A DNA stretch of 50,303 bases from Callorhinchus milii (taxonomy: Eukaryota): the NCBI RefSeq assembly GCF_018977255.1, contig NW_024704840.1:124001-174303 (forward strand). Direction: 5' to 3'. Both the position numbers and the translations under genes were made by a program. Of this stretch, positions 896 to 50,303 are shown in pieces. Positions within the stretch are counted from its first letter, which is position 1. Every line of letters begins with the position of its first letter. The notes beneath the pieces are model-generated. The model was not told the origin of the DNA and ran no database searches. It saw only the letters and a list, made by a program, of their open reading frames with translations.

Positions 896-1147
896 GAGGT
901 AAGCCCCCCAGACTGGTGAACGGAGAGAGCCGGTGTGCAGGGAGAGTAGAGCTGTACAGCAATGACACTTGGGGGAGAATTTGTGGAGACACCCTGAGCA
1001 TGAAGATTGCCGGAGATATTTGCAATTATTTGCGATGTGGATTTGCTGTAACAGCCTCAAGTGACGCTCGCTTTGGAGAAGGATCGGGGCCTGTGTTTGG
1101 TCGGCCTGACTGCGCACACGGACTGGACGGTGGCATAATCTGTTCAG
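896..1147 (+). CDS. SRCR (group B-like) domain exon, internally shortened
   Basis: Acceptor ttggcag|ga. Translation KPPRLVNGESRCAGRVELYSNDTWGRICGDTLSMKIAGDICNYLRCGFAVTASSDARFGEGSGPVFGRPDCAHGLDGGIICS shows RLVxG, CxGRVE, WGxxC, FGEGSGP and GxxCS motifs. The 3' end is uncertain. Confidence 0.8.
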
Positions 1148-4100
1148 TTATAGACCACAACTACAACAAAGTGCCATTGATATGGGTGGGGTGGGGGGAG
1201 TAGGCCCAATGAAATTTTAATTTGGGGATTGTTGGCAAAGTCAACAGGAAAATAATCCCTTCCGTTATTGAATGTCGTCATGAGATTTGTTACCACTACC
1301 TGAACACGCAGTCAAGGCTACACGCAACTCCAGCTCACACTGACCCCGAGCTCACACTGACCCCGAGCTCACACTGACCCCGAGCTCACACTGACCCCGA
1401 GCTCACACTGACCCCGAGCCCACACTGACCCCGAGCTCACACTGACCCCGAGCCCACACTGACCCCGAGCTCACACTGACCCCCCGAGCTCACAGTGACC
1501 CCGAGCTCACAGTGACCCCCCCCGACCACAGTGACCCCGAGCTCACAGTGACCCCGAGCTCACAGTGACCCCGAGCTCACAGTGACCCCGAGCTCACAGT
1601 GACCCCGAGCTCACAGTGACCCCGAGCTCACAGTGACCCCGAGCTCACAGTGACCCCGAGCTCACAGTGACCCCGAGCTCACAGTGACCCCGAGCTCACA
1701 GTGACCCCGAGCTCACAGTGACCCCGAGCTCACAGTGACCCCGAGCTCACAGTGACCCCGAGCTCACAGTGACCCCGAGCTCACAGTGACCCCGAGCTCG
1801 CAGTGACCCCGAGCTCGCAGTGACCCCGAGCTCGCAGTGACCCCGAGCTCGCAGTGACCCCGAGCTCACAGTGACCCCGAGCTCACAGTGACCCCGAGCT
1901 CACAGTGACCCCGAGCTCACAGTGACCCCGAGCTCACAGTGACACCGAGCTCACACTGACCCCGAGCTCACACTGACCCCGAGCTCACATTGACGCCGAG
2001 CTCACAACTGACCATGAGTTCAGATTGATTTGAGCTCAAACTCAGCCCGAGGTCACATTATACCGACCCCCAGCTCACATTGAGCTCGAGCTCACACTGA
2101 CGCCCAGCTTATACAGAATCGAGTTCACAATGACCCCCAACTGACTCTGACCCTCGAGCTCACGACGAACCCGAGCTTAAACTGTCCCCGAAATCACACT
2201 GACCCTGAGCTCAATTGACCTCGAGCTCAAACGGAGCCCGAGCACACGCTACACTGACCCCCATCTTGCACTGACGTTCCAGCTTACACTACTACCCAGC
2301 TCACACTGAGCCTCGAGCTCTCACTGATCCCGAGTTCACACTGAGCCACACCCAGCACTGAGACCGAACTCACAATAACAAAAGCTCACACGGAGAACGA
2401 GCTCACACAGACCCCAAGCACATATTGATATCGGAGCTCACATTGACCACGAATTGCTGCTGACTCCGAGCTCACACTGAGCCCCCGAACTCACACTGAC
2501 TCCCAACTCACACAGACACGTAGCTCAGAGAAAGGCTGCACCCAAATTCAAAATGCGGTTCTTCTGTCAGTTTACAGCTAACTCTGACTTCGCATTAACC
2601 CCGATCTCACACTGACCCTCAGCTCACATAGACACTGACTCTGAGCTAACACTGATTCTGAGCTAACACTGACTCCGAGATAACACTGACTCCGAGCTCA
2701 CAGAAAGTCTCACCCAAACATCAAAAAAATGCTTCAATACGGAGGAATTGCAGCGTCAAACCAAGACACGTAGTTGGAACAACCCACATTTCTGTCTCGT
2801 ATTAAACCTCAGACAGAAACAGTCTCACAGAGTGAGGCTGGGCTTATTTTCGACAATGATGTTCACTGTCACAGAACAGATCAGAGTGAGTGTTTGTGAG
2901 ATTATCTTTACTGTGTTTTGATTTCAGATCCACTTCAGAAAGCCATCATTTCCCTGAAGCCAGATTCCCGGGTGTTTGTGAGAGGGGAAAGCGCTCAGAT
3001 CTCATGTTCTGGGAATTATCCTGACAGCAAATTCTCTTTATACATAAACGGCAAGTTTTTAACATCACGGACAACTCCGGAAAACATCCAAACGGCAAAT
3101 TTCACCCTATCGGATTTCAGTGCAGGAAATTACACGTGTAAATACACTACACATATAGACGGACGAGAGTTCACATCCCCAGCGAGCGAACGAGTGGGAA
3201 TCTCTTTGTGGGGTAAGATCTGAGTAAGATTTCACGGAATAACCTGTTTGTGTTTCTCTCACGAATCTGTTAAATGGCCGTTCGCTGCCGTTGGTTTATG
3301 GTAGAGTTAGTCACAGATCCACCCTCCAACTACAACTGCCACCCACACCGCTCAACACCCATGCTCACCCTTGTACCAACCACTCAAAGATAAAAGTCTC
3401 CTTCCATTCCTCACTTTCCTCCTTATTCCATTTTACACATTCTATTCCCCAACCCTTCATTACTTCTATTACTCATCCTCACGCACATTCTATTCCTCCC
3501 ATCCACGCATTCTATTTTTCCTACACACTGACTCTCACGCACAGTCTCCCTCCCTCCCACACCTTTTACTCTCCTCTCCCTCCTGTGGAAGTCTTGCTAC
3601 CTCATGGATGTATCTATACTGTCTGATTCCAATCCCGCTTCAGTCAATGATTCCCACCATCTTACTCCACTGTATGTGAAGTCGTTGCACCTAAATTTTC
3701 TGTTTGTTCCCCTGGATGTGATCGTATCCTGTTATTTAAATGCATCTGAAGGTCAGTTGAGAGTTTCTGTCTGCATTCCCGGTCACACGACCCTGGCTAT
3801 AGCTTTGTGTTACATCAGGCCACGGCCTCACTGCCCTCCACGGCCACCCCAGTGCCAGCCGTTGACCCCTCCCGAGGTTTAAAGAAACATATGCTCGGTC
3901 CTGTCCTGTAACTTTCGCTTAACCCTTGCCTCTCCCAGTCTTCATGATGCTTCCTTCAGGCTGAGAAATAAGCAAGTAGACAGTTTTCCTCTGAACCGAA
4001 CAGTTTTCATGTCACGGAGCGAGTGTTTTTGAGATGATCTTTAGTTTAATTCCAGAACCGCTCCAGAAACCCACCATTTCCCTGAAGCCAGATTCCCGGG

Positions 4101-7100
4101 TGTTTGTGAGAGGGGAAAGTGTTGAGATCTCATGTTCTGGAAATTATCCAGGCAGTAATTTCTCCTTATACAGAGAAAGGAAGTTGATCTCATCACAGTC
4201 GGCTCCAGAGAATAACAACACGGCAACATTCGCCCCATCGCAAATCAGTGCAGGAAATCATTCGTGTAAATATGCTAAACAGACAGTCGCACGCGAGCTC
4301 ACATCACCAGAAAGCGAACGAGTGGGAATCTTTTTGTGGAGTAAGAGCGAGATCTTGAACTCTCTCATCAATTGGTATTCACTGTCCCCTTGTATCCAAT
4401 CACTGCGATCAGAGCGAGCATTCTCACTTTACTCTATATAATTATAGACCTATACAGCACAGAAGGAGGCCATTCGGCCTCTCGACCCTATGCCGACTCT
4501 TCGAAAACAGCTAGCCGATTCAATCCAACGCCCCTGTTCGCTCCGTACCCTCTGTCCCACAACCTGATACCCTCTTACACCTTGATATCATCCCACATCC
4601 CCATTGCCGACCACAAACTCTGTTACTTCCACAACGTCTGTTCCTAACGTCCACCCCTTGGTACCCTCCAATAGCTTCTATTCGCCTCTCCCTCAATCCA
4701 TCCCACACCACCTCTCCCTTCAAAATCCACTATTCCCTTGCCACTCATGTGAAGGTCTCTCTACATCTTGAACGTATCTAGACTATCTGATTCAATCCTA
4801 CCTTGAGGCTATGGGCTCCAAAATCTCAATTCCCTCATTGAGAAGTCGATGCTCCTGAATTCTCTGTTTCATCTTTTGGTTCTGATTTTATTCTGTTGTT
4901 TAAAGTACGCCTGAAGATCACACGAGCAGTTCACATTAAATTCCCATTCTAGCTTCCTAAGCTGGAGCTCGTTGTTGTACAGTCGCTGGCCCCATTGCGT
5001 TCCCTCTCCTCCGCTCTCAGCCGTTGCTCCGCTCCCTCTGTGAAGAGAAACACTTGCTGTAATCTGTTCCGAACCTGCCCCTCAAAACTTTCCGCTCGTA
5101 ATTACGCCTCCTCCAGGCTGGGAAACAAGGAAATGCTCACCTTTACTCTGAACGGAGCAGTGTCTCTTTCACAGAGCGATTATTTGTGAGATAATCGTTA
5201 CTGTGTTTTAATTACAGATCCGCTCCCGAAACCCACTATTTCCCTGAAGCCAGATTTCCGGGTGTTTGCGGGAGGGGAAATCGCAATGATCTCATGTTCT
5301 GGCAAATATCCTGGCAGCAATTTCTCTCTGTACAGAGACGGCGAGTTTATCTCATCACAACCAGCTCCAGAAAATAACCAATCGACCACATTCACCCAAT
5401 CGGACATCAGTGCAGGAAATTACTGGTGTAAATATACTGCACACATAGAGGGACGAGAGATCACATCACCAGAGAGCGATCGATTGGCAATATCTGTGCG
5501 GGGTAAGAGCGAGAGCCTGCACCCTCGCCAACCAATGGTACCTTACTGCCCCCTAGTGTCTATTCACCGCGATCACAGCATACCTCCGCCCCAACCTCCC
5601 ACTCCTTTATAGAAACACAGAATTATTAGCATGGCAGGAGGACATTCAGTGGAATATACTTGTGTTGTTTCTTTGAAAAGAGCTATCCGATTCAATCCCA
5701 CTCTTCCGCTTGTCTACTCTCTCTCCCTCTCTTTCTCTCCGGAAACTTTGCCTTCCCAAATAATTAGCTTCTTTCCCTATCTTTGTGACACGAGTCAGTC
5801 CCCATTCCTCCCTTCCTACTTCCCGCTGATTGCCTCGTTGCCTCCCACAGACAGCCTGCCTCAATCTCTCTCCTTCACAGAAGCTTTCGACCCTCCGTCA
5901 CATATACTAATACCCTCACATACCATGATACACTCCCACACACTTATTGCGTCACACACACTCTGTTACTCCCACACTAATTATTTCTCCATCCCATCCA
6001 CTAAACAACGCCCAAATATTCTAATCCCCTCTTCGTCATTCCATCCTACAGTCCAACGCAATTGAAAAGTCTTAGTCCACTCTCGCTCATGTGAAGTTCT
6101 CAATGAATCTAGAATATCTGATTCAATCCTAGCTTCAGGCAGCGATTTCCACCATCACATTTCCCACTGGTGAATCTCTTGCTGCTTAAATCTTTTTTAT
6201 ATTGCCCGATTGTGATCTGTCACCCTCTTCCCCTCTCCCACCTTTTCAGCGCCAATCTCCCATCCCCTCCTCTCTCCCTACACCACCATTCGCCAGTCCC
6301 ACTCTATCCCGACTCTCCACGTCTCTACCCCACCTCCGTCTACGTTTCCCCCACTTGCTAAGCTCGAGACCCTCTTGTATCATATACAGTGTTGATGCTT
6401 GTATTTCGGTGAGTGCCAAAAGCCAGCATTTAAGTTGAGGTAAATGCTAATGTTTTTCTTGCTAAATGCATAAAACATGTCATTGAGATGGAGCGATGGG
6501 CGTCCATCGCTCCCGCTGGTTTTCATCTCGGACAGGAGATGAGAAGAATTACTCTCTGCCCGTATTGATTTGTCTGCCCTTCCAGGTCCTGGCCATGGCC
6601 CAGCCTGGGCTTTTATGCCAATAGCAGTGAGTGCAACTTGATAGTCGGAAACGCCTGGCTCAGGAACGGGACTCGGGTCCAATCAGTAGTTATTCGATTC
6701 TGATATTCCAAGTCCATCTTTCCCTCTCACCCACCCCACCTCCCCCCCACACCATAAACCACCACTGCACGACTCACCCCTATTTGTTATTATAATCAGG
6801 ATTTGCATTCCATTGAGTTGTTCATGTAACAGTGAGGGTTGATGAAGGAAATTTAGTTGTTCTTGTGTACGTAGACTTTCAAAATGCGTTAGTTAAGGTG
6901 CCAAAACAGTCTGATTGGCAGCATTGAAGGCCATAGGTTTAAGGGAAGTGTATGGAAACATGGATCTAACATTGGCTGGAAGCAGACCGCAGTGGGTAAT
7001 AGTGAACTGTTTTCAGGCTGGAAGAAAGTATACAGTTGTGTCCCCCAGGATACGTTACTAGTGTTAATGTTTTTTGAATATATTAACGATCTATACTTGG

Positions 7101-8789
7101 CTATATATGCAAAATTTTAATGTTCGCAGATGGCACAGAATTTGGAAGTGTTGCAAAAATGAAGGAGGATGGCAGCAGACTGCAGGAGAATACCGACGGA
7201 ATGGTGAAATGGGCAGACACATGGAAGTAGCTAATGCAGAGCAGTGGGAAGCGATAGATTTTCAGAAGAGGAATGAGGAGATGCAATAAACAATAAATGT
7301 GGCAGTTCTCAAGGGGGTGCAGATGCACAGAGACCTGGGTGCACATAAGCAATTCATTGTAGGTGCCGGAACAGGTTGGCGAAGCATCTAAAAACAAGCA
7401 TACATTATACTTGGGTTGATAAATTTAAAATGCAAGAGTAAGTAGCTTCTGTCAACCTCTGGTAACAGTTAGTGAGATGTCAGCTGGGTTAATGTTTCCA
7501 ATTGTTATCACCACACATTATGAAGAATGCTAGAGACTTGTCGCCTTGTGGAGGGTACTGAGGACATTGATCAGGATGAAGGACGTAATTACGTTGAGAG
7601 ACTGGAAAAGCTGTTCTTCTTAGAGAAGTGATTTAGAATGATGTACAGAAAAAGCGGTAGAGGCATGAGGAGGATTGTTTTGATCCAGGGAGTTGGTTGG
7701 AATGCACTGCCTAAAGTGTGGTGGAAACAGATTCGACAACAGCTTTCAAAGCAGCACTAGATATGTACTTAAAAAAGAAAAATAATGCAGGTCTACGATG
7801 TAAGATCGTGTCATTGGGACGGTTTGGTTGCTCTTCAAAAACTCTTCGCCGTACGCGCGAAGTGCGAAATGACCCCCTTCTGTTTTGCAACATTATATTC
7901 TCTATGATTCCACATAAGAGGTTGTGGTACTTGTTCCCCGTATCCGCTGAGTTCCTTCCTCTAATCCTTCTTCTTAACCACCCTTTGTCTGTCCATAATC
8001 TCATTTGTTGTTTTACCTCTTTAGCTGCTCCTATGTTCACATTTCCCACCTGCTCTCCCGTGGTTGGCAAACAAAGGTTCTCTGTGCAGCGCTACCAGGC
8101 GCTATCCTCTGTGAAGGGACCGATATAAATGTTGGATGCTGTTGTTGTAATCGTCCTTTTGATTTGTTAATCAGGAGATAACTTTGCAAGCTGCTTTGCA
8201 TTCCAGCCAGAGCCAAACATCCATAATAATAATAATAATAATAATCCTTGCATTTGATATAGCGCTTTTCGTGTCAGGAGGATATCCCAAAGCGCTTCAC
8301 AGAACACACTGTAAAATGAATTGTATATTTGTGGGCGAACGCAGCAGCCAATTGCGCACAGCAATGTCCCACAAACAGTCGTAGATTGAAAATGAACAAT
8401 TTGTTATTGTTTTTGGTTTTTGGAGGGATTAGCACAGGTTGAACTATAGTAATATCCAGCAGAGGTGATGGATGTTGTGTCTGTGCTTCTCTATAAAATT
8501 GCAATCATTTCAGTCGTGTTTACTCCACAAGGGATGCACATCCCCGCTATATAGATATCCGGCTGACCAATGATACATCGGCCACTCGAATAATCATGAT
8601 TCAGTCACTGACCAGTGTTGTATCTGTGTCTTTTTCACAGGTTACTTGACTACTCAGAGAATTGCGAACGTCGTCCGCCTCATCCTGGTTCTCGCGTTGT
8701 TTCCGGTAATTATTGTCGAGCTCGTGGTTCAACATCGACGAATAAAAAAGGATAACAGTCAAGAAAGGGTCAGTGAAGACACGACCTGA
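896..8789 (+). CDS. Multi-exon type I membrane receptor: shortened SRCR + 3 LRC-type C2 Ig domains + Arg-containing TM + short tail; signal-peptide exon not found
   Basis: Exons 896-~1147, 2928-3212, 4056-4340, 5218-5502, 8641-8789. All acceptors are AG and phase 1; all Ig donors are GTAAGA in phase 1. Ig1-Ig2-Ig3-TM splice in frame to TGA at 8787-8789. The SRCR-to-Ig1 junction is inferred because its donor is not canonical. Confidence 0.75.
1336..2710. repeat. 17-bp minisatellite (CACAGTGACCCCGAGCT / CACACTG variant); near-perfect 1336-1990, degenerate to ~2710
   Basis: Direct tandem copies with 17-bp period; blocks of CACACTG, CACAGTG and CGCAGTG variants. Confidence 0.95.
2928..3212 (+). 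CDS. LRC-type C2 Ig domain exon 1
   Basis: tttcag|at ... tgg g|gtaaga, 285 nt. DPLQKAIISLKPDSRVFVRGESAQISC-SGNYPDSKFSLYING...ANFTL...AGNYTCKY...SPASERVGISLW, with FxLY in place of the C-strand Trp as in LILR/OSCAR/VSTM1-type domains. Confidence 0.9.
4056..4340 (+). CDS. LRC-type C2 Ig domain exon 2
   Basis: tccag|aa ... tgg a|gtaaga, 285 nt. PLQKPTISLKPDSRVFVRGESVEISC...FSLYRE...ATF...AGNHSCKY...SPESERVGIFLW. Confidence 0.9.
5218..5502 (+). CDS. LRC-type C2 Ig domain exon 3
   Basis: ttacag|at ... cgg g|gtaaga, 285 nt. DPLPKPTISLKPDFRVFAGGEIAMISC...FSLYRDG...AGNYWCKY...SPESDRLAISVR. Confidence 0.9.
6830..7780 (+). mobile_element. Degenerate CR1 LINE reverse-transcriptase fragment
   Basis: Frame-broken remnants of VY.DFQ.A..KVP, VPQG, YINDL, FAD.T..G, LQ..D....WA..W, LERLEKL and VG.WNALP..VVE motifs. 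Confidence 0.8.
8223..8431 (-). mobile_element. DeuSINE-like SINE, 5'-truncated (young type)
   Basis: Reverse complement of the tail ctgtttgtgggacattgctgtgcgcaattggctgc...gaagcgctttggga...aaagcgctatatcaaatgcaagga(tta)n. Confidence 0.85.
8641..8789 (+). CDS. Transmembrane + short cytoplasmic exon of the Ig receptor
   Basis: Strong acceptor gtgtctttttcacag|gt (phase 1). GYLTTQRIANVVRLILVLALFPVIIVELVVQHRRIKKDNSQERVSEDTT*: hydrophobic span with Arg near its N-end, Glu near its C-end, then a basic stop-transfer RRIKK. Confidence 0.8.
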
Positions 8790-11329
8790 ACTGTCCACTG
8801 ATCTCTTGAAAGCTCTCGTAATCCAGCTGGTGTCTAGATTACCCTCCGTCTAAATCAGCAGAATCTTTCTCACACTGTTGATTACATTTCTTCCCTTTGC
8901 TTTTGCCTCAAACACCTTGATGCACTCACTTCCCAGTTCTCCGTCTCCTTTTTCCTCCTGTGAGAGTTGAAGAGGGACCTTCAGGGATGAGCGGCAAAAT
9001 GCACCTGCCTATAATCAGACCAATAGCCATTCCCACATTTGATATTGCAGTTGTCACACCAGGGAAACGTCTGAAAGCACTTTTCAAGATGTACTGTTGA
9101 AAGACGAGGTTATTTGGGGGTAAACGCGGCAGCTAATTTGTGCACAGCAATGACCCAGAATCAGCCAGCAAGTTAATCAAACCAAAGAATCGTATGATTT
9201 ATTTTGTAGGCGTACACAGATATATAATAAAGTTGCTTTGCGGTGGATTAAGATGGAATATTTCTTTCTGTTTGATTACTCATTAGCACATCAGCAGGTT
9301 CAGAGGGAGATGGACTTTGGGAATGAAGGATTAAGGTGTCAGTTGGAAATGAAGGGAGACTTAAAATGCGAAACAATATACTATTTCATAGCACACTTCA
9401 CATCAGGAACATGCCTGCAAATGATGTGCACAGCTGACTACACTACCTTGCTGCTATTTGCTTAAAACCATCCATTCCACACTGAGAGCTTCACATATAT
9501 GGTAATAATAAACAGATCCTACTTTTTTACCTTTGCTATAAAGCCTTTCTTACCCGGAGAATTTCTCAAAGGGCTTCACAGAATATACTGTTAAGTGCAG
9601 TGACTGTGAGTTTTTGTGTGATTGCCGCAGCTATTTTTTGCAGAACACTGACAACATGTGGACCTTTCCTTCTGTGTGGAATGGAATCGGTGCTCTCTGA
9701 CAGTGATGCTCCCTGGTCAGCTGTGCTTGGCATTAGAATGACACATAATAGGAATATATTTGTACTTTTGATCAGCTTTGCTCAAATTAAATATGCAGTT
9801 GTAATCGTTTTAATATTTTAACGTTTTTTATTCTGTTAAGCTGACTACTGTGCTGTTTTGGTGTGCATTTTACATATAATAGGGATGATCTGACATTAAC
9901 TCTTTTGCAGCTTTGCTTAAATGAAAGTCCGCTACTAAATTAATTACGCTATAAATCTTTAAAACCTTTGAAGTGAAACAGAGTTGTTTCTGCAGCTCAT
10001 GGCCTTCCTGTGCCTGTGTTTTCCAGCGAGGTTTTAATAACAATTTTGTGAAGTTTCCTTGACTGATATTTGTTGTCCTTCCCTTGCTTGGTTGGATATG
10101 TTGTGAGAAGATGGAATGTAGCAGCAGATATTTTGTACGAAAAGTGGAAAAAACAAACAAGGAAACGGTGTTAACGGTGCAAAGATATAACTTGGGTGTT
10201 GAGTCGTTATTAATGAAGTTCCCTTATCTTCTGTTCTTGCTGATGTGCTCCAACAGTGAAGGAAAGTTTTGTTGGATGGTATCCGTTGTGTAAAAATCAA
10301 GAGCAATGCGTCTGATTGTTTTGTTGTAAAGTGGGTTGATTGGAAATGGGGAAACGCTGTATATGTGTGTGATAATGACTTGTCTCAAGTCGAACATCCT
10401 TTAGTGAGAAGAAGAAGACAATACAGACCAATTGGCAACATTCCCTTTCTATATAAAAATGTTCTTAGTTCAGATCCTACACTCCATAAATTTGATTATC
10501 TCGGTGTTCGATATCTGAAAATCAATAGTTACTGAAGTTTTACCTCCTCTCCTCTCACCTAAGCCTTAATATTTCCGTCTTTGCGTACTCTAGATCCTAC
10601 CTCTAACACCATCTCCAGTTTGTCTGCACAAGTTGCTTCTTCTGGTGCCCCCGCACAGTCTGGTGCAACGCTCTTGAGGGCTCTCTCCTTGGTGGTCTTC
10701 TCTTTAACATTTTCGTGCTCGTTTTTATAGCGGGTGGGATATTTGGTAGCAGAGGGTCATGCTACAGCCTTGTTTCTGTCTGAAACTGTAGATTCAGACA
10801 GAAACAATTGCTGCACAAATTGCTAAAATACATCCTCTCCTCGATTCCTGTTCACACTCTCACTGCCAACGTACCGAGATGTTAAATGAACTCTCCATAA
10901 TTAAAATTTACTATTTTTATTTAACTGCCTTACCTGACTGCATGTTACTTCTTCTGCTTCTGTTCTGCCACACTGAGGACTGCATCAACCCCACAGAAAT
11001 TTAAGCAGCTCCTACTCAAATGCTGCCCCATTGACCAATGGAACCATTGCTCAATGGGAAAGGATGTGCGTACGAGATAACAGCAATAACATGACAATAC
11101 TAACACGCAATTCATGCTGAGTTATATTGCCTGTTGAGCGAGTAACCACACTCCACATTGCGTGTGTCTTCCTTGAATCGAAATGGTAGTTTAAGCTGAA
11201 CAACCCCCAAATGAACCACTCTGCTTATTCCCCAACTCCGAAATAAAATCCTCGTCTGCCATGACCTCTCCACTCCTGTTGTCACCACTTATATTCTTGC
11301 ATTTGTCACACACACTTGGTCACGACAAG

Positions 11330-11630
11330 GATTTTCTCGCCGGATTATCCAGTTTCTCCTTATAATATAAAGACAATGCAGAACTTTCCAGATTATGTCC
11401 TTTTCCACAAAAGGCTCCACAAGTCTGTGACCGCATCTTTCTTGGCTCCGTTTGGTCTCCAAATCCCCCAGCAAATTGGTTTCAAGATCCTAGTCCTCAA
11501 GTTCAAATATAAATATTACTGCCTGAACTCAACCACTGTGACAGCTTCAAATTATAACGACCAGCCTGGTCCCATCATAAGTCAAGCCTCGCTATCTTTA
11601 GAAACTCTACCCTACGTGTCCAACCATCAG
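11330..11630 (+). mobile_element. Degenerate L2-clade LINE ORF2 C-terminal fragment
   Basis: ORF 11316-11798 contains QN...VL...QIPQQIGFKILVLKFK, resembling L2 LHWLPV..RI.FKIL.L.FK. Confidence 0.6.
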
Positions 11631-11643
11631 TTATCGGGCGATC

Positions 11644-11901
11644 CAGATCAGGGCGAAACCTTGGGCAAGTTTCCTTACTCCACACGCCTAATAATAATCA
11701 CTCCAATAAAACAAAAGAAGATCAAAATTGGTCATTTTCAATCTACGACTGTTTGCGGGACATTGCTGCGCGCAATTGGCTGCCGCGTTCGCCCATAAAT
11801 ATGCAGTCAATTCACTTTAAATTGTTTTCTGTGAAGCGCTTTAGGACGTCCGCCCGACGTGAAAAGCGCTATATCAAATGCAAGGATTATTATTATTATT
11901 A
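11644..11901 (+). mobile_element. DeuSINE-like SINE, partial head
   Basis: gggcgaaaccttgggcaagtttccttactcc...ctgtttgcgggacattgctgcgcgcaattggctgcc...aagcgctatatcaaatgcaaggattattatt. Confidence 0.9.
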
Positions 11902-12198
11902 TCGGACAATCTGCCTGCACACTCTCTGTAACTCAATCCCAGAGTACCCTCAAGCCCAACGTGAGGGGCGACTTGTTAATGCCAATTGTTGTTGTTGTTA
12001 TTGAAACCAGGACCAGCTCCATCGCACATCTCTTTCATGGGCCGTATCAAGACCTTCCTCATTCACCTCGCTCTTGTTTATCTTTCTCTTTCCCATCCAA
12101 TTGGCAAATACCGCTTCCTCCGGTCTCAATATTCCATGTTCAAATGTGTGAGTGTTAATTATTTTTACTTTATACAATTCCATGCACTACCGCGCGTG

Positions 12199-12518
12199 AA
12201 TAATAATAATATTCCTTGCATTTGATATAGCGCTTTTCACGTCGTGTGGACGTCCCAAAGCGCTTCACAGAACACACTGTAAAGTGAATTGACTCTATAT
12301 TTGTGGGCGAACGCGGCAGCCAATTGCGCACAGCAATGTCCCACAAACAGTCGTGGATTGAAATTGACCAATTTATTATTGTTTTTGGTTGTGGAGGGAT
12401 TATTATTAGGCTCTGTGTGGAGTAAGGAAACTTGCCCAAGGTTTCGCCCTTCCTGGAATTGAACTCAGGTCTCTCGCTTGCAAAGCGAGTGCTTTAACAC
12501 TGAGCTACAGGACTCCAC
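12199..12518 (-). mobile_element. Full-length young tRNA-Ala-headed DeuSINE-like SINE
   Basis: Reverse complement begins gtggagtcctgtagctcagtgtta (A box), ctcgc-tttgcaa-gcgag anticodon arm, gagttcaattcc (B box), and ends in a (TAT)n tail. Confidence 0.92.
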
Positions 12519-12954
12519 GTATGTAGTTTGATAGAAGCAAATGATAGATGCAAAAAACCTTGACTTTCCAGGGCCCCGGGACGTCTTTCCGACTTGAAGG
12601 GCACGATAAAAGTGTGTAATTTGTTTATTTTGTTGCTCCATTTGTTCTTCTTGTGCTTCCTGTAAAATATTTTCAATTATGTTGCTCCTTTCTTTCTGTT
12701 TTTATTTCATTCTGCGCTTAATTTTATGTATTTTGTGTGTAACTTCTTTTCAATTCACAATAACAAATTTAATCCAAGTGTGACATTTGCAAATCTCAAG
12801 TGGATGATTAACTTGTTTGTTCATATGTCTGGAACTAATTGCACTCATGATGCCAGATGTAGTTTCATGTCCCTATAAGTACAAATTTATTTCAGTGTGA
12901 CGGCAGTGTGTTCATCGAAGTCTCTGCCTTCAGCAACAATATGTAAAACAGAGA

Positions 12955-35363: not shown

Positions 35364-35457
35364 ATCAGCCGCTTCCTCACAACTTTTCAGTGAAGCAGCA
35401 ACACAGCGATATACGAAGGAAGAGATTCAGTTATCTGTCCACACCTCAGCAGCCAAC

Positions 35458-36274: not shown

Positions 36275-36313
36275 CACACTGTTACAAGAAGGCAGATTCA
36301 CTGTACAAAAACT
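36275..36313 (+). other. 23-RSS of V7
   Basis: CACACTG, 23 nt, ACAAAAACT. Confidence 0.94.
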
Positions 36314-37169: not shown

Positions 37170-37580
37170 AGAGAGACAGAGCGAGACTGAGAGAGAGTGA
37201 GAGAGCGCGAGTGAGTGATAGATANNNNNNNNNNNNNNNNNNNNNNNNNNNNNNNNNNNNNNNNNNNNNNNNNNNNNNNNNNNNNNNNNNNNNNNNNNNN
37301 NNNNNNNNNNNNNNNNNNNNNNNNNNNNNNNNNNNNNNNNNNNNNNNNNNNNNNNNNNNNNNNNNNNNNNNNNNNNNNNNNNNNNNNNNNNNNNNNNNNN
37401 NNNNNNNNNNNNNNNNNNNAGCGAGAGAGAAAAAGAAAGAGAGCGTGAGTGTGTGTGAGAGCGAGAGATAGAGAGAAAAAGAGAGAGGGAGAGTGAGTGA
37501 GAGAGAGACAGAGATAGAGAGAGCGTGAGAGTGATAGAGAGAGAGAGAAAGAGAGAGAGAGAGATGAGAGAGAGAAGGAT
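37170..37580. repeat. (GA)n-rich tract containing an assembly gap (N at 37225-37419)
   Basis: GA repeats on both sides of 195 Ns. Confidence 0.95.
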
Positions 37581-39224: not shown

Positions 39225-40019
39225 ATGTATATCTATTGGGCAGCAGCCATCATTACCTTGTTAGGTAAGCGATAAACTCCCTCGTTAAGTCTGGTCCCTG
39301 CAAATAAAATCTAATGCTTATGTTTTATTGCATACAATAACCAATATGCTGCAGGGCTTTAGCGGTCGACTGGCGGCACAGGTTAAAACCTTCGGCAAGT
39401 ATGCTTACTCCACACACAAGCCGGTGTTGACCTACCAATACGTAGGCTTCCGATTATAAGTCGATCCGCAGATGCCTTTTGTGGTGTGATAAACCTTTNT
39501 AAAAAATTACCTATGATAATATGTGCTCGCCATCCAGAATTTCTGTGCGCATACGATGCGGTGCTTTGCCCAGTAAATACACTTAATGTGAATTACATGA
39601 AGCGCTTGGACATCTCCAATCTGTGATAAGTCGCTATATGAATTGAAAGCTTTCTCAACGTGATTTTAATTATTGTATTGAATGTTGTTGCATTGTGTCT
39701 GTTTCCCAGGATATTGTGGAGGTGATTCAGTGACACAGCTCGAAACTTCTTTAACAGTGAATGAAGGGGAGGATGTTACTCTGCAGTGTAATTACACAAC
39801 TACAAGCACCAGTCCCTATCTGTTCTGGTACCGTCACTATCCCAACAGAGCTCCAGAATATATCCTTAGAAAAGACACCAGCAACAAGTTCCCGGACCAC
39901 GCGGACTTTGCAAAACAACGTTTCTCAACGAATGTGTCTAAAGAGGAGAGAACCGCCCCAATAAATATATTCCAAATGAGAGTTGCAGACTCCGCGAGGT
40001 ACTACTGTGCATTGAGCCC
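39225..40019 (+). CDS. TCR alpha/delta V segment V8 (family C); leader 39225-39264, V exon 39710-40019
   Basis: MYIYWAAAIITLL g|gtaagc (the first ATG of its paralogues is lost, the second is kept); ccag|ga. YCGGDSVTQL...QCNYTTTSTSPYLFWYRHY...DSARYYCALS. Confidence 0.92.
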
Positions 40020-40058
40020 CACAGAGGTACAGATCAGCGATTCCGCCCTACAAAAACT
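40020..40058 (+). other. 23-RSS of V8
   Basis: CACAGAG, 23 nt, ACAAAAACT. Confidence 0.94.
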
Positions 40059-41652
40059 GCCACTTGGAGTCCTGTAGCTCAGAAGTTACACCACTCCCCT
40101 CGAAAGCAGCAACCAAGCGAGATACTTGCGTTCGATTCAAGGCAAAGCGCTTCGAGGCGTTTCGAAGATGTGATTTGGCACTGTAAAAAAAGCAAAGGTT
40201 CTTATTATCATTAAATACGATCATGTTATTTTCACAGAAATAACTTCATATATTTTTTTTCGGGTGGGACCTGCATCTGGAAGTGTCTTCCTCTGCTATT
40301 TGAACAAGGAGGAAAAAATTTGAAACTTTAAATTTAATTTACGTAGCGACATTCATAACGGGAAAGTTATGACGGGCCGAAATCAATTTGCTATCAACTG
40401 TGTCCAAATGTACATGTGCTGTAACTCCAATCCAACAGCAGAAATCGCACGAAAGACACACATAACATGAGCAGCGACTGACATAACTTCTCACGTTCAT
40501 TTCTGTAACTAACATCCTTGGCAGCAATAACAGGTGCTTCCTCTTACATTTGACATAGTTTCCTGATATGCACTGCTGCTACTTCAGCTGAAGTGTAAAA
40601 CCTTTGAAACATTATTATCACAAAACTTAGGTTGCTCAAGAAACATTATTTGCATCACTTTTTATAGGTGTTGTCTTTGTCCAACACTAGCAGCCACCCT
40701 TAAGTGGATCTCACTGCGGTAATAAATATGTTAATTTTTGTTAAGATCAATATGGTCCTTTATATTGGTTTAGCTTGAAAAAGAGATTACAACCGACATA
40801 TTTTAATTTAATTTAAGAATTGAAGAACTATTCCGTACAGCCTGTGAGATGAAACTGCCAAACTGGGTCCAAAACCAACAACATTCAGACGCATAAAAGC
40901 AAGTACCAGTAACAGAGGCAGATTTTCACCTCAGCCACGATGAGAGAAAGTAAACTTTTTTCTAAAGCTGGGCTGCTTGGTTCAAAATCAACCATGTGAA
41001 TGCATTCAGATCAATAATGAAAATAAAAATGAGCATTTCATATGGAACCATATTGCGTCATGGAGACGTCTGAAAGCGCTTCAAAGAATATACTTTAAAA
41101 CAAAATTGTGAGTGGGTGAAACGCGACTACTCACTTCCTGGCCCAGAACCTCTGGTCTCCAATCTGCAGCAGATCAACTTCGTGATCCTCACAGGCGAAA
41201 ATAACATCAACAGAGAAATGTTGTCACCTCAGCCTTGATGTCAGAACGTAAACCTTTATCCCCTCAAAGCTCTGCTGCATGTCTCAACCATTCATCAACT
41301 TAATAAATGCATTCATTTTAACAATAAAGGTTAAAATAAAAATAAAGTTTTCATTTGATGTAGTGACTGATCACATCTTACAGACATCGCAAAGCGGTTC
41401 ACGTAATACATTGTAAGGAACAATGGATGAAAAGTTTGTCAATGTTCCCATCCAAGCCCTGAACCTTTGGCTCCCAGTCGCCATCAGATCAAGTTCAAGT
41501 TCCTCTGGTTAGTGGGAAACGCCTACAATTGTAAAAAATAAACCATTTAACACGTCAGATCAGCCGCTGCCTCACAACTTGTCGCTGAAGCAGCGACACA
41601 GCGATATACAAAGGAAGAGATCCCATTATCTGTCCACACCTCAGCAGCCAAC

Positions 41653-42429
41653 ATGACAGCTCACTGCCAGTTACTGATAGCCATCCTCACCATAGCCAGT
41701 AAGTATGTGTGGACATGCACAGCGCATGATTTTTACATCATAAACATTCCGAAGCATAATGTTTAGAGAGGTCGCCTCACCAGCGAGAGAACCCGAGTTT
41801 GGTTGCAGGGCAATGAAACCTTTCAATGCGTTTGCTGACACCCACCAATCTGTTTCCACAGCATTAAGTAGGAAACATGTTGATAGTCTATTCCCCGATC
41901 GCTATCGGAGGTCAATAACCCATTATCGTATAAATCAATTTACAATAATATCGGTGAAATACTGTGGTGTTCAATACTCTGCTCAGTTTCGCCAAAAATA
42001 TAATCAATTCGCTTTGCAATATATTCTGTGGTTTCTTTGAGACTGATGTACTGTGCGGTAACGTGCTCTGTAAAGTGGATAAAAGCAAATTATAAGTTGC
42101 TCAGAAAAATGTGTTGCTCTTGTTCTTGCAGAAGTTAGCGGGCAAGATGTTGTATCACAGTATCCTCGCGAGAAAACAGAAATTGAAGGGCAAGACGTGA
42201 TACTAAACTGCAATATTTCAAGATTGAATACTGTCTTCTGGTACAGGCAAAACTCGGGCGGAGCTCTTCAATACGCGCTCAGGATATTAACCACTGGAAC
42301 GGTAAACAAATCTCCTGATCTACCTGAACGTTTCACTGCTGAGCTGATCAACAAGAATAAAGTAACTAAGCTGCAGATACTCGGGGCTGTTGTGGGTGAC
42401 AGCGCTGTGTATTACTGTGCCCTGGATCC
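41653..42429 (+). CDS. TCR alpha/delta V segment V9 (family D); leader 41653-41698, V exon 42132-42429
   Basis: MTAHCQLLIAILTIA a|gtaagt; gcag|aa. VSGQDVVSQYP...LNCNISRLNTVFWYRQNSGG...ERFTAEL...DSAVYYCALD. Confidence 0.93.
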
Positions 42430-42468
42430 CACACTGTTACAGGAAGGCACATACCCCGTACAAAAACT
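42430..42468 (+). other. 23-RSS of V9
   Basis: CACACTG, 23 nt, ACAAAAACT. Confidence 0.94.
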
Positions 42469-43167
42469 CAGCAGAAAGTCATGACTTCCGCTCACGTATT
42501 TAATTTGGTGCTTTCAACAAACTGATGTGGTTATACAGTATTAACAAGGAGAGTGGTGTAAACAGGCTGTGCTGTCTTGTTGTGTATGGGATTAAGCAGT
42601 CGTTTTGCAAGCTGGGGGAACCGGTTTCTTTAGNAAAAAACGCTTTTTCCTGCCAGCAGACAGCGGTTGAACATAACAACAAAAGAGAACTAATGCAGCA
42701 GAATGTAGCCCAAAATAGACATACCTCACCAAGTCTTGTCTCTTGCCTGTCAGCACCCAGTAATCTGTTAAATTAAGCAAACACTATGCGTTCCTCCAGG
42801 GAGAAAGAGAAAATTCGTTTCCATAGGCACATTTGCACGCGAAAATGGCATATATGTGGAACTGTTGAATGGGTTTTCGTGAACTGGAATATGGTTGTAA
42901 CTTGGTTCAGACACAATGCTTAACAAAGACATGTCACTGATGGAAGAGAACCATTGGATGAGTTAGATGGCAGAGCAGAGAAGGTGACGCACAACGACAG
43001 AGACACAAGGTTTGTACATAACATTCAGACCTGCTCCCTCACAGAATATGACAACTTCTGTATGTTATTTCCTGTTTAGCTCTCCTCACGGTATCTTACA
43101 TCCTCCCAGCCAACTTTCTCCAACTCCACCCTCAACGCTCTCACAACGTCCCGTGACATTAATACAT

Positions 43168-44016
43168 ATGACAATGTATGTCTATGTGGTAGCAGTGATC
43201 ATTACCTTGTCAGGTAAGCGACAAACTCGCTCTATTAGTCTGCTTCATTTGCATATTTTCCAATGAATATATATTTTTGCATTACATAACCAATACGGTA
43301 CACGACTCATGCATTCCTGCAGCAAACGTGTTGATTTGGGTTTAGTTCCCGGCTTGGACATAGCGAAACCTCAGGCAAGTTTCCTTCTTCCAGAAACGCA
43401 CCACTTTTTACATCGAGATATGTAGGTACCCGTTCGTTGGTCGATCGTCGGATCAGTTTTCGGTGTTAATAATCGCTTAACAGGCAACAGTAATAATAAT
43501 GCTGTCAGTCAATCCATGACTTTTTATTAGGAGAATGTTGTGCGCAATTTGCTGCCACGTGTCGCCCACACAATACACATTCTCAGAATATTCTATGAAG
43601 CATTTGGAGACGCAATGATGTAGTATGGCGCTGTATGAAAAGCAATAATTTGTATAATGATTATTGTTATGGTATTGAACGCTGATATGGGTCTGGTTCC
43701 CAGGATATTGTGGAGGAGACGCTGTGACACAGCTCCAATCTACTGTGACAGTGACTGAAGGGGAGGATGTTTACCTGCAGTGCAATTATACAGCTACAAG
43801 CGGCTACAATACGGATCTGTTCTGGTACCGTCACTTTCCCAACAAATCTCCAGAATATATCCTTAGCACAGACAACAACAACAGGATCAAGAAAGGCGCG
43901 GACTTTGCAGAAGAACGTTTCTCAACGAATGTGTCTATAGCGGAGAGAACCGTCCCATTAAATATATTGCAAGTGAGAGTTAGAGACTCCGCGGGGTATT
44001 ACTGTGCACTGAGCCC
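43168..44016 (+). CDS. TCR alpha/delta V segment V10 (family C); leader 43168-43213, V exon 43704-44016
   Basis: MTMYVYVVAVIITLS g|gtaagc; ccag|ga. YCGGDAVTQL...QCNYTATSGYNTDLFWYRHF...ADFAEERFS...DSAGYYCALS. Confidence 0.93.
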
Positions 44017-44055
44017 CACAGAGGCACAGATCAGCGGTTCCGCCCTACAAAAACT
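44017..44055 (+). other. 23-RSS of V10
   Basis: CACAGAG, 23 nt, ACAAAAACT. Confidence 0.94.
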
Positions 44056-47186: not shown

Positions 47187-47968
47187 ATGCTGATGTGGGA
47201 GACATGTGCTGTGCTCTCAATCACTCTCAGCTTACTTTACCGTTAGTATCTTTTGTACATCTTCCTTTCTTAATATCGTGTTATACCATTTACAACATTA
47301 TAATATTAATAATCTTTGCATTTGATACAGTGCCTTATCGTATATTCGAGCCGATTGCGAATAGCAGCTTTTATCGAATAATCATGGATTGAGTGATCAC
47401 ATTACTATCTATTTTATTATTGATTTATTATTGAAGGGCTAGTTACCAACTGGAAAAGAGAGGCGCCAATCGGCTGACAAATTTGTTCCTATTGATTGCT
47501 TGGTAAACAGAGGCATATGGAGCAAGGAAAATTGCCTAAGCTTTCGCCCTGCCCCAGTATAAAAGTCGAATCTCTTGCTTGTGAGGCGAATGCTCCCATC
47601 AAACACTACAGGACTCCACGTAAGTCAAATTTTCTGCTCAACAATATTTTCCTTTAAATCACAGGAGTCAGCCTGCAAGACACGGGGAAACAACCGATTG
47701 CTGAAATATCAGTTGAAGAGGGAAAATTTGTGAAATTATCCTGCACCTTAAAGAAAATCAGTGATGCCACCTATCTTTACTGGTACAGACAAGCTTCCAG
47801 AAACGCTCCTGTCTACATACTTCAGTCTGCTGTAGGGAAGGATTATATGAGCCCTGACTTCCCAGATCGATTTTCCTCCATAGTCAATAATACTAATGAA
47901 GATTTCGAACTGAGTATAGTCAACGTCCTGATCAGGGACAGTGCCGTGTATTACTGCGCCAAGCGGCC
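47187..47968 (+). CDS. TCR V segment V11 (family E); probable leader 47187-47241, V exon 47665-47968
   Basis: MLMWETCAVLSITLSLLY c|gttagt (weaker donor); acag|ga. VSLQDTGKQP...KLSCTLKKISDATYLYWYRQ...FPDRFSS...DSAVYYCAKR. Confidence 0.85.
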
Positions 47969-49612: not shown

Positions 49613-50072
49613 ATGAAGCAGAATTGCAATGCAAAATATATTATTTTGAATGTAATAGTGTTCCTACGGTGTGAGTAGATGATGCTTGTGTGCAAGCAAA
49701 AGCTTTTATTTCCTGATAAATAATTACAAACTGTAGTGGCAGATGTTTTCCGAATTCCTTTCCAAAAATATTCATTTCTACTTTCTTTCCAGGTGTCTTG
49801 GCTGCAAGTGATGTCTCCCAGACACCTCAGGCCGTGACAGTGAATGAAAATGGAAATGTTTCAATGGAATGCATCGCCACTGTGACCAACTCTCTCTTTC
49901 AGTGGTATCAACTTTATGGAAACGGCTCCATTCGGTTCTTGGTTTTGGGAAAAACCGACGTAAATATGAAGGACAGGATAAGAGCTTTGGCTGATCGAAA
50001 ACAGAAAAACTGTACGCTTACAATCGAAGATGTGCGAGTATCAGACACCGCCATTTACGTCTGTGCGGAGGG
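49613..50072 (+). CDS. TCR alpha/delta V segment V12 (family A); leader 49613-49670, V exon 49793-50072
   Basis: MKQNCNAKYIILNVIVFLR t|gtgagt; ccag|gt. VLAASDVSQTP...MECIATVTNSLFQWYQL...KNCTLTIEDVRVSDTAIYVCAEG; close paralogue of V4. Confidence 0.92.
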
Positions 50073-50111
50073 CACAGTGCTGTGTGTCTAAGAGGGACCT
50101 GTACAAAAACA
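50073..50111 (+). other. 23-RSS of V12
   Basis: CACAGTG, 23 nt, ACAAAAACA. Confidence 0.96.
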
Positions 50112-50303
50112 TGTTGGTTTTACTGCTACTCAATGGTTAGAGCACTCGCCTCCCAAGCGTGAGGGCCTGGGTTCGGTTTCCGTCCTGGCAAAATGTTGTG
50201 CTAGTTTTCTTACACCTCATGCGTCTGCTCACATGGCAGTCTGTAGGAAAGTGGATGTTAATTGATTGGCATATCTCTTTTCAGGGTGCAAGAATTGTTT
50301 AAA

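What the first reader, a model, noticed from the sequence alone, without database searches (positions are those of the whole stretch)
896..50303. LRC-type receptor and GPCR sit within 12 kb of the first TCR alpha/delta V segment
Seen: gene order is receptor (to 8789), GPR139-like (12955-16455), V1 (20694), all on the + strand, with no V segment found left of 20.6 kb. Known: in mammals the LRC and the TRA/TRD locus are on different chromosomes, and the 'primordial immune complex' hypothesis proposes ancestral linkage of antigen-receptor and NK/LRC-type genes. Inference: this may be direct physical linkage supporting that model, or a young lineage-specific insertion.
Basis: partly seen in the sequence, partly recalled or inferred. 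Interest (0 to 1): 0.8.

Follow-up and report, generated by a model that had tools for sequence, protein, structure and literature searches.

The report
Immune receptor, GPCR beside T-cell V genes
In this chimaera-like fish sequence, an innate-type immune receptor gene and a GPCR gene really do sit just upstream of a row of 12 T-cell-receptor-type V segments, but both belong to fast-duplicating gene families, so the closeness looks lineage-specific and is not proof of an ancient immune gene complex.

Summary
On the + strand the window carries three things in order.

- **Receptor gene (896-8789), 3' part only:** one short SRCR exon, three 285-nt Ig exons and one transmembrane/tail exon. The Ig domains are LILR/KIR-like.
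- **GPCR gene (12955-16455):** intact, two exons, 326 aa.
- **V array (from 20694):** 12 germline V segments. Eleven have 23-spacer RSSs and resemble TCR alpha/delta V. No V lies left of 20.6 kb.

The N gap at 37225-37419 lies inside a GA-rich microsatellite between two V segments. It touches no exon and does not affect the 0.9-21.5 kb linkage.

- The receptor is a chimeric SRCR + LRC-type-Ig receptor of the activating type. It belongs to a family of at least about ten Callorhinchus milii genes with activating and inhibitory forms.
- Its SRCR exon has lost the canonical GT splice donor.
- The GPCR is "GPR139-like" only by automatic naming and belongs to a family with more than 2000 matches, all 120 listed being cartilaginous-fish proteins.
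- One C. milii scaffold has a TRAV-like V pseudogene between two receptor genes, so the families look interspersed in chimaeras.
- Three elasmobranch loci with LRC-type genes showed no V within 10 kb.

Lineage-specific juxtaposition is most likely. Ancestral linkage is not excluded.

The parts
896..1147 (+). Short SRCR-domain exon (third SRCR of the family's architecture). The acceptor AG is at 894-895. The expected phase-1 donor reads TT (1148-1149) instead of GT.
   Evidence: Pfam SRCR, E = 6e-12. It is 73% identical to the short SRCR that directly precedes the Ig domains in C. milii XP_042201732.1. Five of six C. milii paralogous exons keep the GT donor.
1332..2517 (.). 17-bp minisatellite (about 69 copies) in the SRCR-Ig1 intron. 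Many units contain a perfect CACAGTG heptamer.
   Evidence: The same repeat sits at the same intron position in C. milii paralogues.
2928..3212 (+). LRC-type Ig exon 1 (285 nt, phase 1-1).
   Evidence: Pfam Ig_2/Ig_3/ig, splice sites, 88% identical to the C. milii L002 exon.
4056..4340 (+). LRC-type Ig exon 2 (285 nt, phase 1-1).
5218..5502 (+). LRC-type Ig exon 3 (285 nt, phase 1-1).
   Evidence: PDB best match LILRB2 at 5e-13, followed by PIR-B, KIR3DL1, OSCAR, GPVI and NKp46. Profile search.
8641..8789 (+). Transmembrane and short cytoplasmic-tail exon with an Arg near the outer end of the TM segment, then the stop codon. This is the activating-receptor type.
   Evidence: The Arg and the tail are conserved in C. 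milii XP-annotated P0306.
10540..18300 (+). GPCR block. It is colinear (82-85% nucleotide identity) with C. milii contig WEZY01002705.1, which has no V or Ig exon in the 21 kb read. The left edge coincides with the end (10530) of colinearity with a C. milii receptor locus.
12955..13024 (+). GPCR exon 1 (ATG to a phase-1 donor inside TM1).
15545..16455 (+). GPCR exon 2 through the stop codon. The spliced product is 326 aa and intact.
   Evidence: Pfam 7tm_1, E = 1e-16. It is 83% identical to a C. milii 'GPR142' and at most 58% to elasmobranch 'GPR139' proteins.
20694..21545 (+). V1 (family A): leader, intron, V exon, 23-RSS.
23288..25741 (+). V2 and V3 (family B, ending ...YLCAVE), each with a leader and a 23-RSS (23737, 25703).
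27994..31036 (+). V4 and V5 (family A), with 23-RSSs at 28347 and 30998.
32812..36313 (+). V6 (family C) and V7 (family D), with 23-RSSs at 33672 and 36275.
37225..37419 (.). Assembly gap inside a GA-rich microsatellite between V7 and V8. It is intergenic and was not filled.
39225..44055 (+). V8 (family C), V9 (family D) and V10 (family C), with 23-RSSs at 40020, 42430 and 44017.
47658..47960 (+). Divergent twelfth V exon (ending ...YYCAKRP) with only a weak heptamer and nonamer. Its best matches are mostly antibody single-chain Fv constructs and light chains, not TCR alpha.
49613..50111 (+). V11 (family A): leader, V exon, 23-RSS at 50073.

Best explanation
The window covers a real junction in a holocephalan (chimaera-type) genome between two kinds of sequence.

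- **Left side:** the 3' part of a gene for a cell-surface immunoregulatory receptor. It has N-terminal SRCR domain(s), three LILR/KIR-like Ig domains, and a TM segment with an Arg plus a short tail. That build would signal through an ITAM adaptor, as LILRA, PIR-A or OSCAR do.
- **Right side:** a head-to-tail array of 12 germline V segments. Eleven are TCR alpha/delta-type with 23-spacer RSSs.
- **Between them:** a 7.8-kb cassette with one intact member of the expanded 'GPR139-like' GPCR family of cartilaginous fishes.

The receptor belongs to a family with paired activating and inhibitory members that evolves by gene birth and death. In chimaeras this family is interspersed with TCR-type V segments. 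The most likely cause of the juxtaposition is lineage-specific segmental duplication and rearrangement in a repeat-rich, duplication-prone region, with the receptor and GPCR embedded in or at the distal edge of the V region. It is less likely to be a preserved ancestral arrangement.

Shown directly: exon structures, domain types, RSSs, gene order, and the parallel cases in C. milii.
Inferred: adaptor signalling, the mechanism of juxtaposition, and the assignment of the V array to the TRA/TRD locus.
For: - Domain and exon anatomy.
- The family has inhibitory members with ITIM tails and activating members with an Arg in the TM segment.
- Family genes lie on at least seven C. milii scaffolds.
- Window 1-5507 is colinear with C. 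milii MU249905.1 at 80-88% nucleotide identity, but the 3' ends differ.
- Window 1332-10530 is colinear with MU249866.1.
- The homology breakpoint lies at 10530/10540, and the GPCR block is colinear with another contig that lacks V and Ig exons.
- The GPCR family has more than 2000 matches, and all 120 listed are cartilaginous-fish proteins.
- A TRAV-like V pseudogene with a 23-RSS lies between two receptor genes in C. milii.
- The receptor-then-GPCR order recurs in C. milii MU249884.1 and in Heptranchias perlo.
- tRNA-derived SINE copies surround the junctions.
- No V was found near LRC-type genes in Heptranchias, Amblyraja or Cetorhinus.
Against: - Each comparison locus shows at most 10 kb either side of the gene looked up, so absence of V segments there is weak evidence.
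- The receptor-V association is seen twice in chimaeras (the window and a C. milii scaffold), and receptor-GPCR adjacency also appears in a shark. Both would equally fit an old linkage.
- I could not determine the species of the window or what lies upstream of it.
- The lost GT donor of the SRCR exon means this particular receptor copy may be a pseudogene, so 'how it works' applies to the family more securely than to this copy.
Confidence: 0.6

Rival explanations
1. Ancestral linkage. The adjacency is a surviving piece of the proposed 'primordial immune complex', in which LRC/NK-type receptor genes and rearranging antigen-receptor genes lay together before the genome duplications and were later separated in bony vertebrates.
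For: - LRC-type Ig domains next to TCR-type V segments appear in two independent holocephalan sequences: the window and C. milii MU249905.1.
- LRC-type Ig genes occur across elasmobranchs, teleosts, bichirs and reptiles, so the domain type is old.
- In elasmobranchs other antigen-receptor genes (IgH, some IgL, UrIg2) cluster with TCR alpha/delta (PMC12227049).
Against: - No V lies within 10 kb of LRC-type genes at three elasmobranch loci.
- The receptor family is scattered over many scaffolds and turns over quickly (paralogues are 70-88% identical in nucleotides).
- The C. milii V is a pseudogene of a different V family and in the opposite orientation.
- The conserved 5' flank of TRA/TRD in coelacanth, Xenopus and amniotes is METTL3-SALL2, with OR genes added in mammals. 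It is not LRC genes (PMC2275272; PMC12698447).
Confidence: 0.2
2. Assembly artefact. The receptor block, the GPCR block and the V array were joined wrongly through shared SINE or simple-repeat sequence.
For: - Colinearity with C. milii loci switches abruptly at 10530/10540 and ends at about 18300.
- The intervals 8.2-12.5 kb and 16.8-20.4 kb are full of tRNA-derived SINE copies and simple repeats.
- The related C. milii regions are all on unplaced scaffolds, so the region is hard to assemble.
Against: - No N run lies between 0.9 and 21.5 kb.
- Both junction types are seen independently elsewhere: receptor next to V in C. milii, and receptor followed by GPCR in C. milii and Heptranchias.
Confidence: 0.08
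3. The V array is not the distal end of the canonical TRA/TRD locus. It is an orphan or satellite cluster of TCR-type V segments, such as those reported between Ig clusters in the cartilaginous-fish antigen-receptor complex. 'First TRA/TRD V' would then be a misnomer.
For: - There is no D, J or C gene in the window.
- One V (47658-47960) best matches antibody single-chain Fv constructs and light chains and has a poor RSS.
- PMC12227049 reports TCR-type and intermediate V exons scattered among Ig clusters.
Against: - Twelve V segments share one orientation. Eleven have good 23-RSSs and open frames, and they fall into four families with tandem duplication. That is typical of a working translocon V region.
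Confidence: 0.15

Closest known systems
Mammalian LRC paired receptors (LILRA/LILRB, PIR-A/PIR-B, KIR, OSCAR, GPVI, NKp46)
   Same: - The Ig-domain sequence type is the same. These proteins are the best solved-structure matches.
- Each Ig domain is encoded by one phase-1 exon.
- The family has Arg-in-TM, short-tail (activating) members and ITIM-tail (inhibitory) members.
   Different: - The ectodomain starts with one to three SRCR domains.
- There is no evidence of synteny with human 19q13.4.
- The family is known here only from chimaeras and automatic annotation.
FCRLS, the mammalian chimeric Fc-receptor-like / SRCR protein (PMC7940838)
   Same: It is an Ig-like immunoreceptor-family protein fused to type B SRCR domain(s).
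   Different: Per the abstract, FCRLS combines FCRL-type Ig domains with type B SRCR-like domains. Here the Ig domains are LRC-type, the SRCR domains are N-terminal, and the protein has TM signalling tails.
5' end of the mammalian TRA/TRD locus, with olfactory-receptor genes interspersed among the first TRAV genes (PMC2275272)
   Same: A rhodopsin-class GPCR gene lies beside the distal V segments of a TCR alpha/delta-type array.
   Different: The GPCR here is not an olfactory receptor. Its best matches are GPR139 and CCK-A, and both are weak. METTL3 and SALL2 are not in the window.
Cartilaginous-fish antigen-receptor complex, AgRC (PMC12227049)
   Same: Immune IgSF genes other than TCR genes lie physically close to TCR alpha/delta-type V segments in a cartilaginous fish.
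   Different: The AgRC as described holds IgH, IgL and UrIg2. The paper's main text has no match for LRC, LILR, SRCR or GPR139.
WC1/SCART SRCR co-receptors of gamma-delta T cells (from my own knowledge, not tested)
   Same: These are SRCR-domain transmembrane receptors with a functional tie to TCR delta-bearing cells.
   Different: They have no Ig domains. No expression or functional data exist for the chimaera family. This is only a lead.

Membership tests
LRC-type Ig receptors (LILR/KIR/OSCAR/GPVI/NKp46/A1BG/IGSF1) | Ig domains of the LRC sequence type | tested here: met
   With a single exon as query, the first 35 PDB matches are all LRC-encoded proteins (LILRB2 at 4.9e-13), and the first Fc-receptor-like match comes at 1e-3. 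The profile search gives the same order. NCBI names the C. milii relatives IGSF1-like, A1BG-like and OSCAR.
LRC-type Ig receptors (LILR/KIR/OSCAR/GPVI/NKp46/A1BG/IGSF1) | One Ig domain per phase-1 exon | tested here: met
   Three 285-nt exons have AG acceptors and G|GTAAG donors.
LRC-type Ig receptors (LILR/KIR/OSCAR/GPVI/NKp46/A1BG/IGSF1) | Paired activating (charged TM residue, short tail) and inhibitory (ITIM) members | tested here: met
   The window copy and C. milii P0306 have an Arg in the TM segment and a short tail. P0295, P0299 and P0143 have tails with VxYxxV and IxYxxL motifs.
LRC-type Ig receptors (LILR/KIR/OSCAR/GPVI/NKp46/A1BG/IGSF1) | Ectodomain built of Ig domains only | tested here: not met
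   An SRCR exon precedes Ig1 in the window, and C. milii relatives have up to three SRCR domains.
LRC-type Ig receptors (LILR/KIR/OSCAR/GPVI/NKp46/A1BG/IGSF1) | Location in a region syntenic with the human 19q13.4 LRC (framework genes) | tested here: inconclusive
   No other protein-coding gene was recognised in the 50 kb. Wider synteny cannot be reached with these tools.
TCR alpha/delta V gene segments | V-set exon with the conserved Cys...Trp...Cys pattern, preceded by a split leader | tested here: met
   Twelve open V exons. Plausible leader ATGs were found for V1-V3 and V6-V11, though the V7 and V9 candidates have no stop within the 30 aa read. No credible leader was found for V4, V5 or the divergent V.
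TCR alpha/delta V gene segments | Recombination signal with a 23-bp spacer directly 3' of the V exon | tested here: met
   Eleven of 12 have one. There are 13 consensus matches against 0.62 expected.
TCR alpha/delta V gene segments | Closest similarity to TCR alpha/delta V domains rather than Ig or TCR beta/gamma | tested here: met
   Representatives of families A, B and C mainly match TCR alpha chains, plus TCR delta. Family D was assigned only by similarity to the other window V exons. The V at 47658-47960 instead matches mostly antibody scFv and light-chain sequences.
TCR alpha/delta V gene segments | Lies upstream of TRDD/TRDJ/TRDC and TRAJ/TRAC | not testable with these tools
   The window ends at V11, and the source genome could not be reached.
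GPR139/GPR142 | Rhodopsin-class 7TM protein with a two-exon gene split in TM1 | tested here: met
   Pfam 7tm_1 at 1e-16. The spliced product is an intact 326-aa ORF. That GPR139 itself has this gene structure is from my own knowledge.
GPR139/GPR142 | Orthology to vertebrate GPR139 or GPR142 | tested here: inconclusive
   Human GPR139 matches at only 6e-7 over the first 130 residues, and the CCK-A receptor scores 2e-6. The gene belongs to a family with more than 2000 matches, all 120 listed from cartilaginous fishes and named GPR139 by automatic annotation. No tree was built.
Ancestral LRC - antigen-receptor linkage ('primordial immune complex') | The same linkage in independent vertebrate lineages | tested here: inconclusive
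   Present in C. milii as a V pseudogene between two receptor genes. Not seen within 10 kb at Heptranchias, Amblyraja and Cetorhinus LRC-type loci. The two Scyliorhinus loci returned no DNA.

The most novel reading that the evidence does not exclude
The SRCR + LRC-type-Ig paired receptors may be an integral and old part of the cartilaginous-fish antigen-receptor complex. That would mean an LRC-type innate receptor cluster physically inside the TCR alpha/delta V region, giving direct physical evidence for the LRC-antigen-receptor linkage predicted by the primordial-immune-complex model. The receptors might then act as SRCR-bearing co-receptors on T cells that use these V segments.
Probability: 0.18. 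Interest if true: 0.8.

Novelty: new variant of a known kind. Interest (0 to 1): 0.5.

Why it matters
- **LRC origin.** A 2014 survey found no LRC-type (C2-only) receptor genes in sharks and concluded that they arose with bony fishes (PMC4016189). This window and its relatives show LRC-type Ig domains in a chimaera, organised as a paired activating/inhibitory family and fused to SRCR domains. Related Ig domains occur across sharks and rays. That moves the origin of this receptor type to the base of jawed vertebrates.
- **A testable linkage question.** The family lies 12 kb from TCR alpha/delta-type V segments here and surrounds a V relic in C. milii. That turns the 'primordial immune complex' idea into a concrete mapping question for existing chromosome-level assemblies.
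- **If lineage-specific.** The region would still be a useful example of how duplication-prone immune regions collect unrelated multigene families: V segments, paired receptors and an expanded GPCR family.

Tried and rejected
- **Species of the window.** No protein match reached 100%. The best were C. milii at 83% (GPCR), 82% (V6) and 88% (Ig1). The source is probably a holocephalan that is absent from the protein collections, or an unannotated C. milii region. I therefore could not look upstream of the window.
- **Full-length receptor search.** A full-length spliced receptor could not be used as a query without typing a long sequence. I used a three-exon profile instead, then the closest C. 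milii protein.
- **Elasmobranch context.** Both Scyliorhinus loci returned no DNA because the gene models are too long, and the Pristis protein was not on record.
- **Olfactory-receptor idea.** I considered that the GPCR might be an olfactory receptor, echoing the mammalian TRA 5' flank. I rejected this because no olfactory receptor appeared among the PDB matches.
- **SRCR exon from another gene.** I considered that the SRCR exon belongs to a separate upstream gene. I rejected this because C. milii proteins join this short SRCR directly to the first Ig domain.
- **Pseudo-RSS hits.** The RSS-like matches at 19328 and 38010 lie in SINE copies, not V segments.
- **Artefact ORFs.** The ORFs spanning the N gap are artefacts of translating N.
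- **Literature.** Searches for a described shark GPR139 expansion and for described shark LRC or SRCR-Ig receptors found nothing relevant. Supplements of the elephant-shark and AgRC papers are not held, and the primordial-immune-complex paper itself is not held.
Full report
**Observation**

The window is vertebrate DNA, 43% G+C. It has one 195-N gap and six single Ns.

A scan for recombination signals found 13 matches to the 23-spacer consensus, against 0.62 expected from shuffles. Eleven of them directly follow an open V-set exon on the + strand. A profile built from the V exons and run over all six frames finds exactly 12 V exons. All are on the + strand, the first lies in the ORF that starts at 20998, and none lies to the left.

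The V segments fall into four families:
- A: V1, V4, V5, V11
- B: V2, V3
- C: V6, V8, V10
- D: V7, V9

A C-D unit is tandemly duplicated. Representatives of families A, B and C best match TCR alpha chains, with TCR delta also present. The twelfth V (47658-47960) has a poor signal sequence and mostly matches antibody single-chain Fv constructs and light chains.

**The gap**

The gap at 37225-37419 interrupts a GA-rich imperfect microsatellite that continues on both sides. It lies between the V7 signal (ends 36313) and the V8 leader (39225). No exon or frame crosses it. Continuity cannot be proven and I did not fill it. The receptor-GPCR-V1 stretch (0.9-21.5 kb) contains no N run.

**The receptor**

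On the + strand there are five exons:
- an SRCR exon (896-1147)
- three tandem 285-nt Ig exons with phase-1 splice sites (2928-3212, 4056-4340, 5218-5502), 63-64% identical to each other
- a last exon (8641-8789) encoding a TM segment with an Arg near its outer end, an 18-residue tail and the stop codon

The Ig domains are of the LRC sequence type. The best solved-structure matches are LILRB2 (4.9e-13), PIR-B, LILRB1, KIR3DL1, OSCAR, GPVI and NKp46. The first Fc-receptor-like match appears only at 1e-3, and a profile search gives the same order.

A profile search of 1.8 billion representative proteins gave 840 matches. The top ones are C. milii proteins that NCBI names IGSF1-like, A1BG-like, OSCAR, DMBT1-like or CD163-like.

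The closest is C. milii XP_042201732.1. Its build is a signal peptide, two full SRCR domains, the same short SRCR, two Ig domains, a TM segment and a tail with ITIM-like motifs. Another C. milii member (P0306) ends with the same Arg-containing TM segment and tail as the window gene.

So this is a paired activating/inhibitory family. The window holds the 3' part of an activating-type member, and its 5' exons lie beyond the window start.

One defect stands out. Where five of six C. milii paralogous exons have TTC(A/G)G|GT, the window's SRCR exon reads TTCAG|TT, so the canonical donor is lost. A donor shifted by one base, combined with a downstream acceptor in Ig1, would keep the frame. That is my reading of the sequence, not a result.

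**The GPCR**

Exon 1 (12955-13024) and exon 2 (15545-16455) splice in phase 1 inside TM1 to give an intact 326-aa protein. Pfam assigns 7tm_1.

Human GPR139 is the best solved relative, but only at 6e-7 over the first 130 residues, and the CCK-A receptor is nearly as good. More than 2000 proteins match. All 120 listed are from cartilaginous fishes, almost all auto-named 'probable GPR139', and they sit on many chromosomes. The window protein is 83% and 75% identical to two C. milii proteins and at most 58% to elasmobranch ones. 'GPR139-like' is therefore a label, not an orthology.

**Comparison with other genomes**

Six C. milii loci were read:
- **MU249905.1 (L002, L006).** Colinear with window 1-5507 at 80-88% nucleotide identity, then diverges to an inhibitory tail. 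About 1-2 kb past that gene lie a partial V and a TRAV-like V pseudogene on the opposite strand. The pseudogene has an in-frame stop and a good 23-spacer signal. A second SRCR-Ig receptor gene follows.
- **MU249866.1 (L005).** Colinear with window 1332-10530 at about 72-80%, including the Arg-TM exon.
- **WEZY01002705.1 (L001).** Colinear with window 10540-18300 at 82-85%. It has no V or Ig exon in the 21 kb read.
- **The junction.** Homology therefore switches partner within about 10 bp at 10530/10540. The 7.8-kb GPCR block behaves as a separate cassette.
- **MU249884.1 (L003).** Carries receptor exons on both strands and a disrupted GPR139-like gene 11 kb downstream of one of them.
- **WEZY01001424.1 (L004).** Carries receptor exons but no V or GPCR in the 40 kb read.

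Three elasmobranch loci were read:
- **Heptranchias.** An IGSF1-like gene is followed 5 kb downstream, on the same strand, by a GPR139-like pseudogene. There is no V.
- **Amblyraja and Cetorhinus.** LRC-type loci show neither V nor GPCR.

Each locus shows at most 10 kb either side of the gene that was looked up, so these absences are weak evidence.

**Literature**

- In coelacanth, Xenopus and amniotes, TRA/TRD is framed by METTL3-SALL2 and DAD1-ABHD4. In mammals, olfactory-receptor genes are interspersed with the first TRAV genes.
- In elasmobranchs IgH, some IgL and UrIg2 cluster with TCR alpha/delta. The main text of that paper has no match for LRC, LILR, SRCR or GPR139.
- A 2014 survey found no LRC-type genes in sharks.
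- The closest described architecture is mammalian FCRLS, an FCRL-Ig/SRCR chimera.
- I found no paper describing the chimaera SRCR-Ig family or the shark GPR139-like expansion.

**Verdict**

The adjacency is real and is echoed in C. milii, so it is unlikely to be a misjoin.

Four points favour a lineage-specific juxtaposition, with the genes probably embedded among V segments:
- Both non-TCR genes belong to rapidly duplicating families.
- The GPCR block has sharp rearrangement boundaries.
- The window has no J or C gene.
- Nothing comparable was seen at three elasmobranch loci.

My estimates are about 0.6 for lineage-specific juxtaposition, about 0.2 for retained ancestral linkage, and just under 0.1 for an assembly artefact.

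The most durable result is that LRC-type Ig receptors exist in cartilaginous fishes. In chimaeras they are fused to SRCR domains and organised as paired activating and inhibitory forms.

Noticed in passing
window 1140-1150: The splice donor of the SRCR exon reads TTCAG|TT, whereas five of six C. milii paralogous exons read GT. This receptor copy may be a pseudogene or may use shifted splice sites.
   Followed up: partly
window 1332-2517 (also L002 20465-20592, L005 31251-33100): A 17-bp minisatellite of about 69 copies lies in the SRCR-Ig1 intron and is conserved in position in C. milii paralogues. About 20 units carry a perfect CACAGTG heptamer, so there are many cryptic RSS heptamers 19 kb from a V array.
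   Followed up: no
window 47658-47960: A twelfth V exon, ending YYCAKRP, mostly matches antibody scFv and light-chain sequences rather than TCR alpha and has only a weak heptamer and nonamer. It may be one of the 'intermediate' V types reported in cartilaginous fishes.
   Followed up: partly
window 10530-10540: Homology to C. milii switches from a receptor locus (L005) to a GPCR contig (L001) within about 10 bp. This is a rearrangement or duplication breakpoint, or less likely an assembly join.
   Followed up: partly
window 12955-16455; L003 71697-73391; L007 50909-54714: A GPR139-like gene lies a few kb downstream of an LRC-type receptor gene, on the same strand, in the window, in C. milii and in the shark Heptranchias perlo (3 of 8 receptor loci read). 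This could be a conserved gene pair or a side effect of the GPCR family's size.
   Followed up: partly
one search hit list (proteins P0001-P0120): More than 2000 proteins match this GPCR. All 120 listed are from cartilaginous fishes, mostly auto-named 'probable GPR139', often dozens per species on many chromosomes. I found no paper describing this expansion.
   Followed up: partly
window 8223-8431, 11649-11902, 12199-12518, 19002-19556, 21655-21979, 36601-36819, 37905-38231 and others: There are at least ten copies of a roughly 330-bp tRNA-derived SINE. Two copies are called tRNA-Ala by ARAGORN, and five (including those two) reach the Rfam tRNA threshold. The copies are up to 97% identical to copies in C. 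milii, and several lie directly after V-segment RSSs.
   Followed up: partly
window 46707-47096: A G-rich tandem repeat (120-bp, 69-bp and 33-bp periods) lies in the long 5.7-kb spacer between V10 and V11, just upstream of the divergent V.
   Followed up: no
proteins P0305 and P0205: A C. milii model named TRIM17-like combines SRCR, LRC-type Ig and SPRY domains. A carp 'CD163-like' protein also matches the LRC-type Ig profile. SRCR-Ig chimeras may be wider than chimaeras, or these may be fused gene models.
   Followed up: no
L002 29917-31213 (= L006 3058-4354), minus strand: In C. milii scaffold MU249905.1, a TRAV-like V pseudogene (in-frame stop, intact 23-RSS) and a truncated V lie between two SRCR-Ig receptor genes.
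   Followed up: yes
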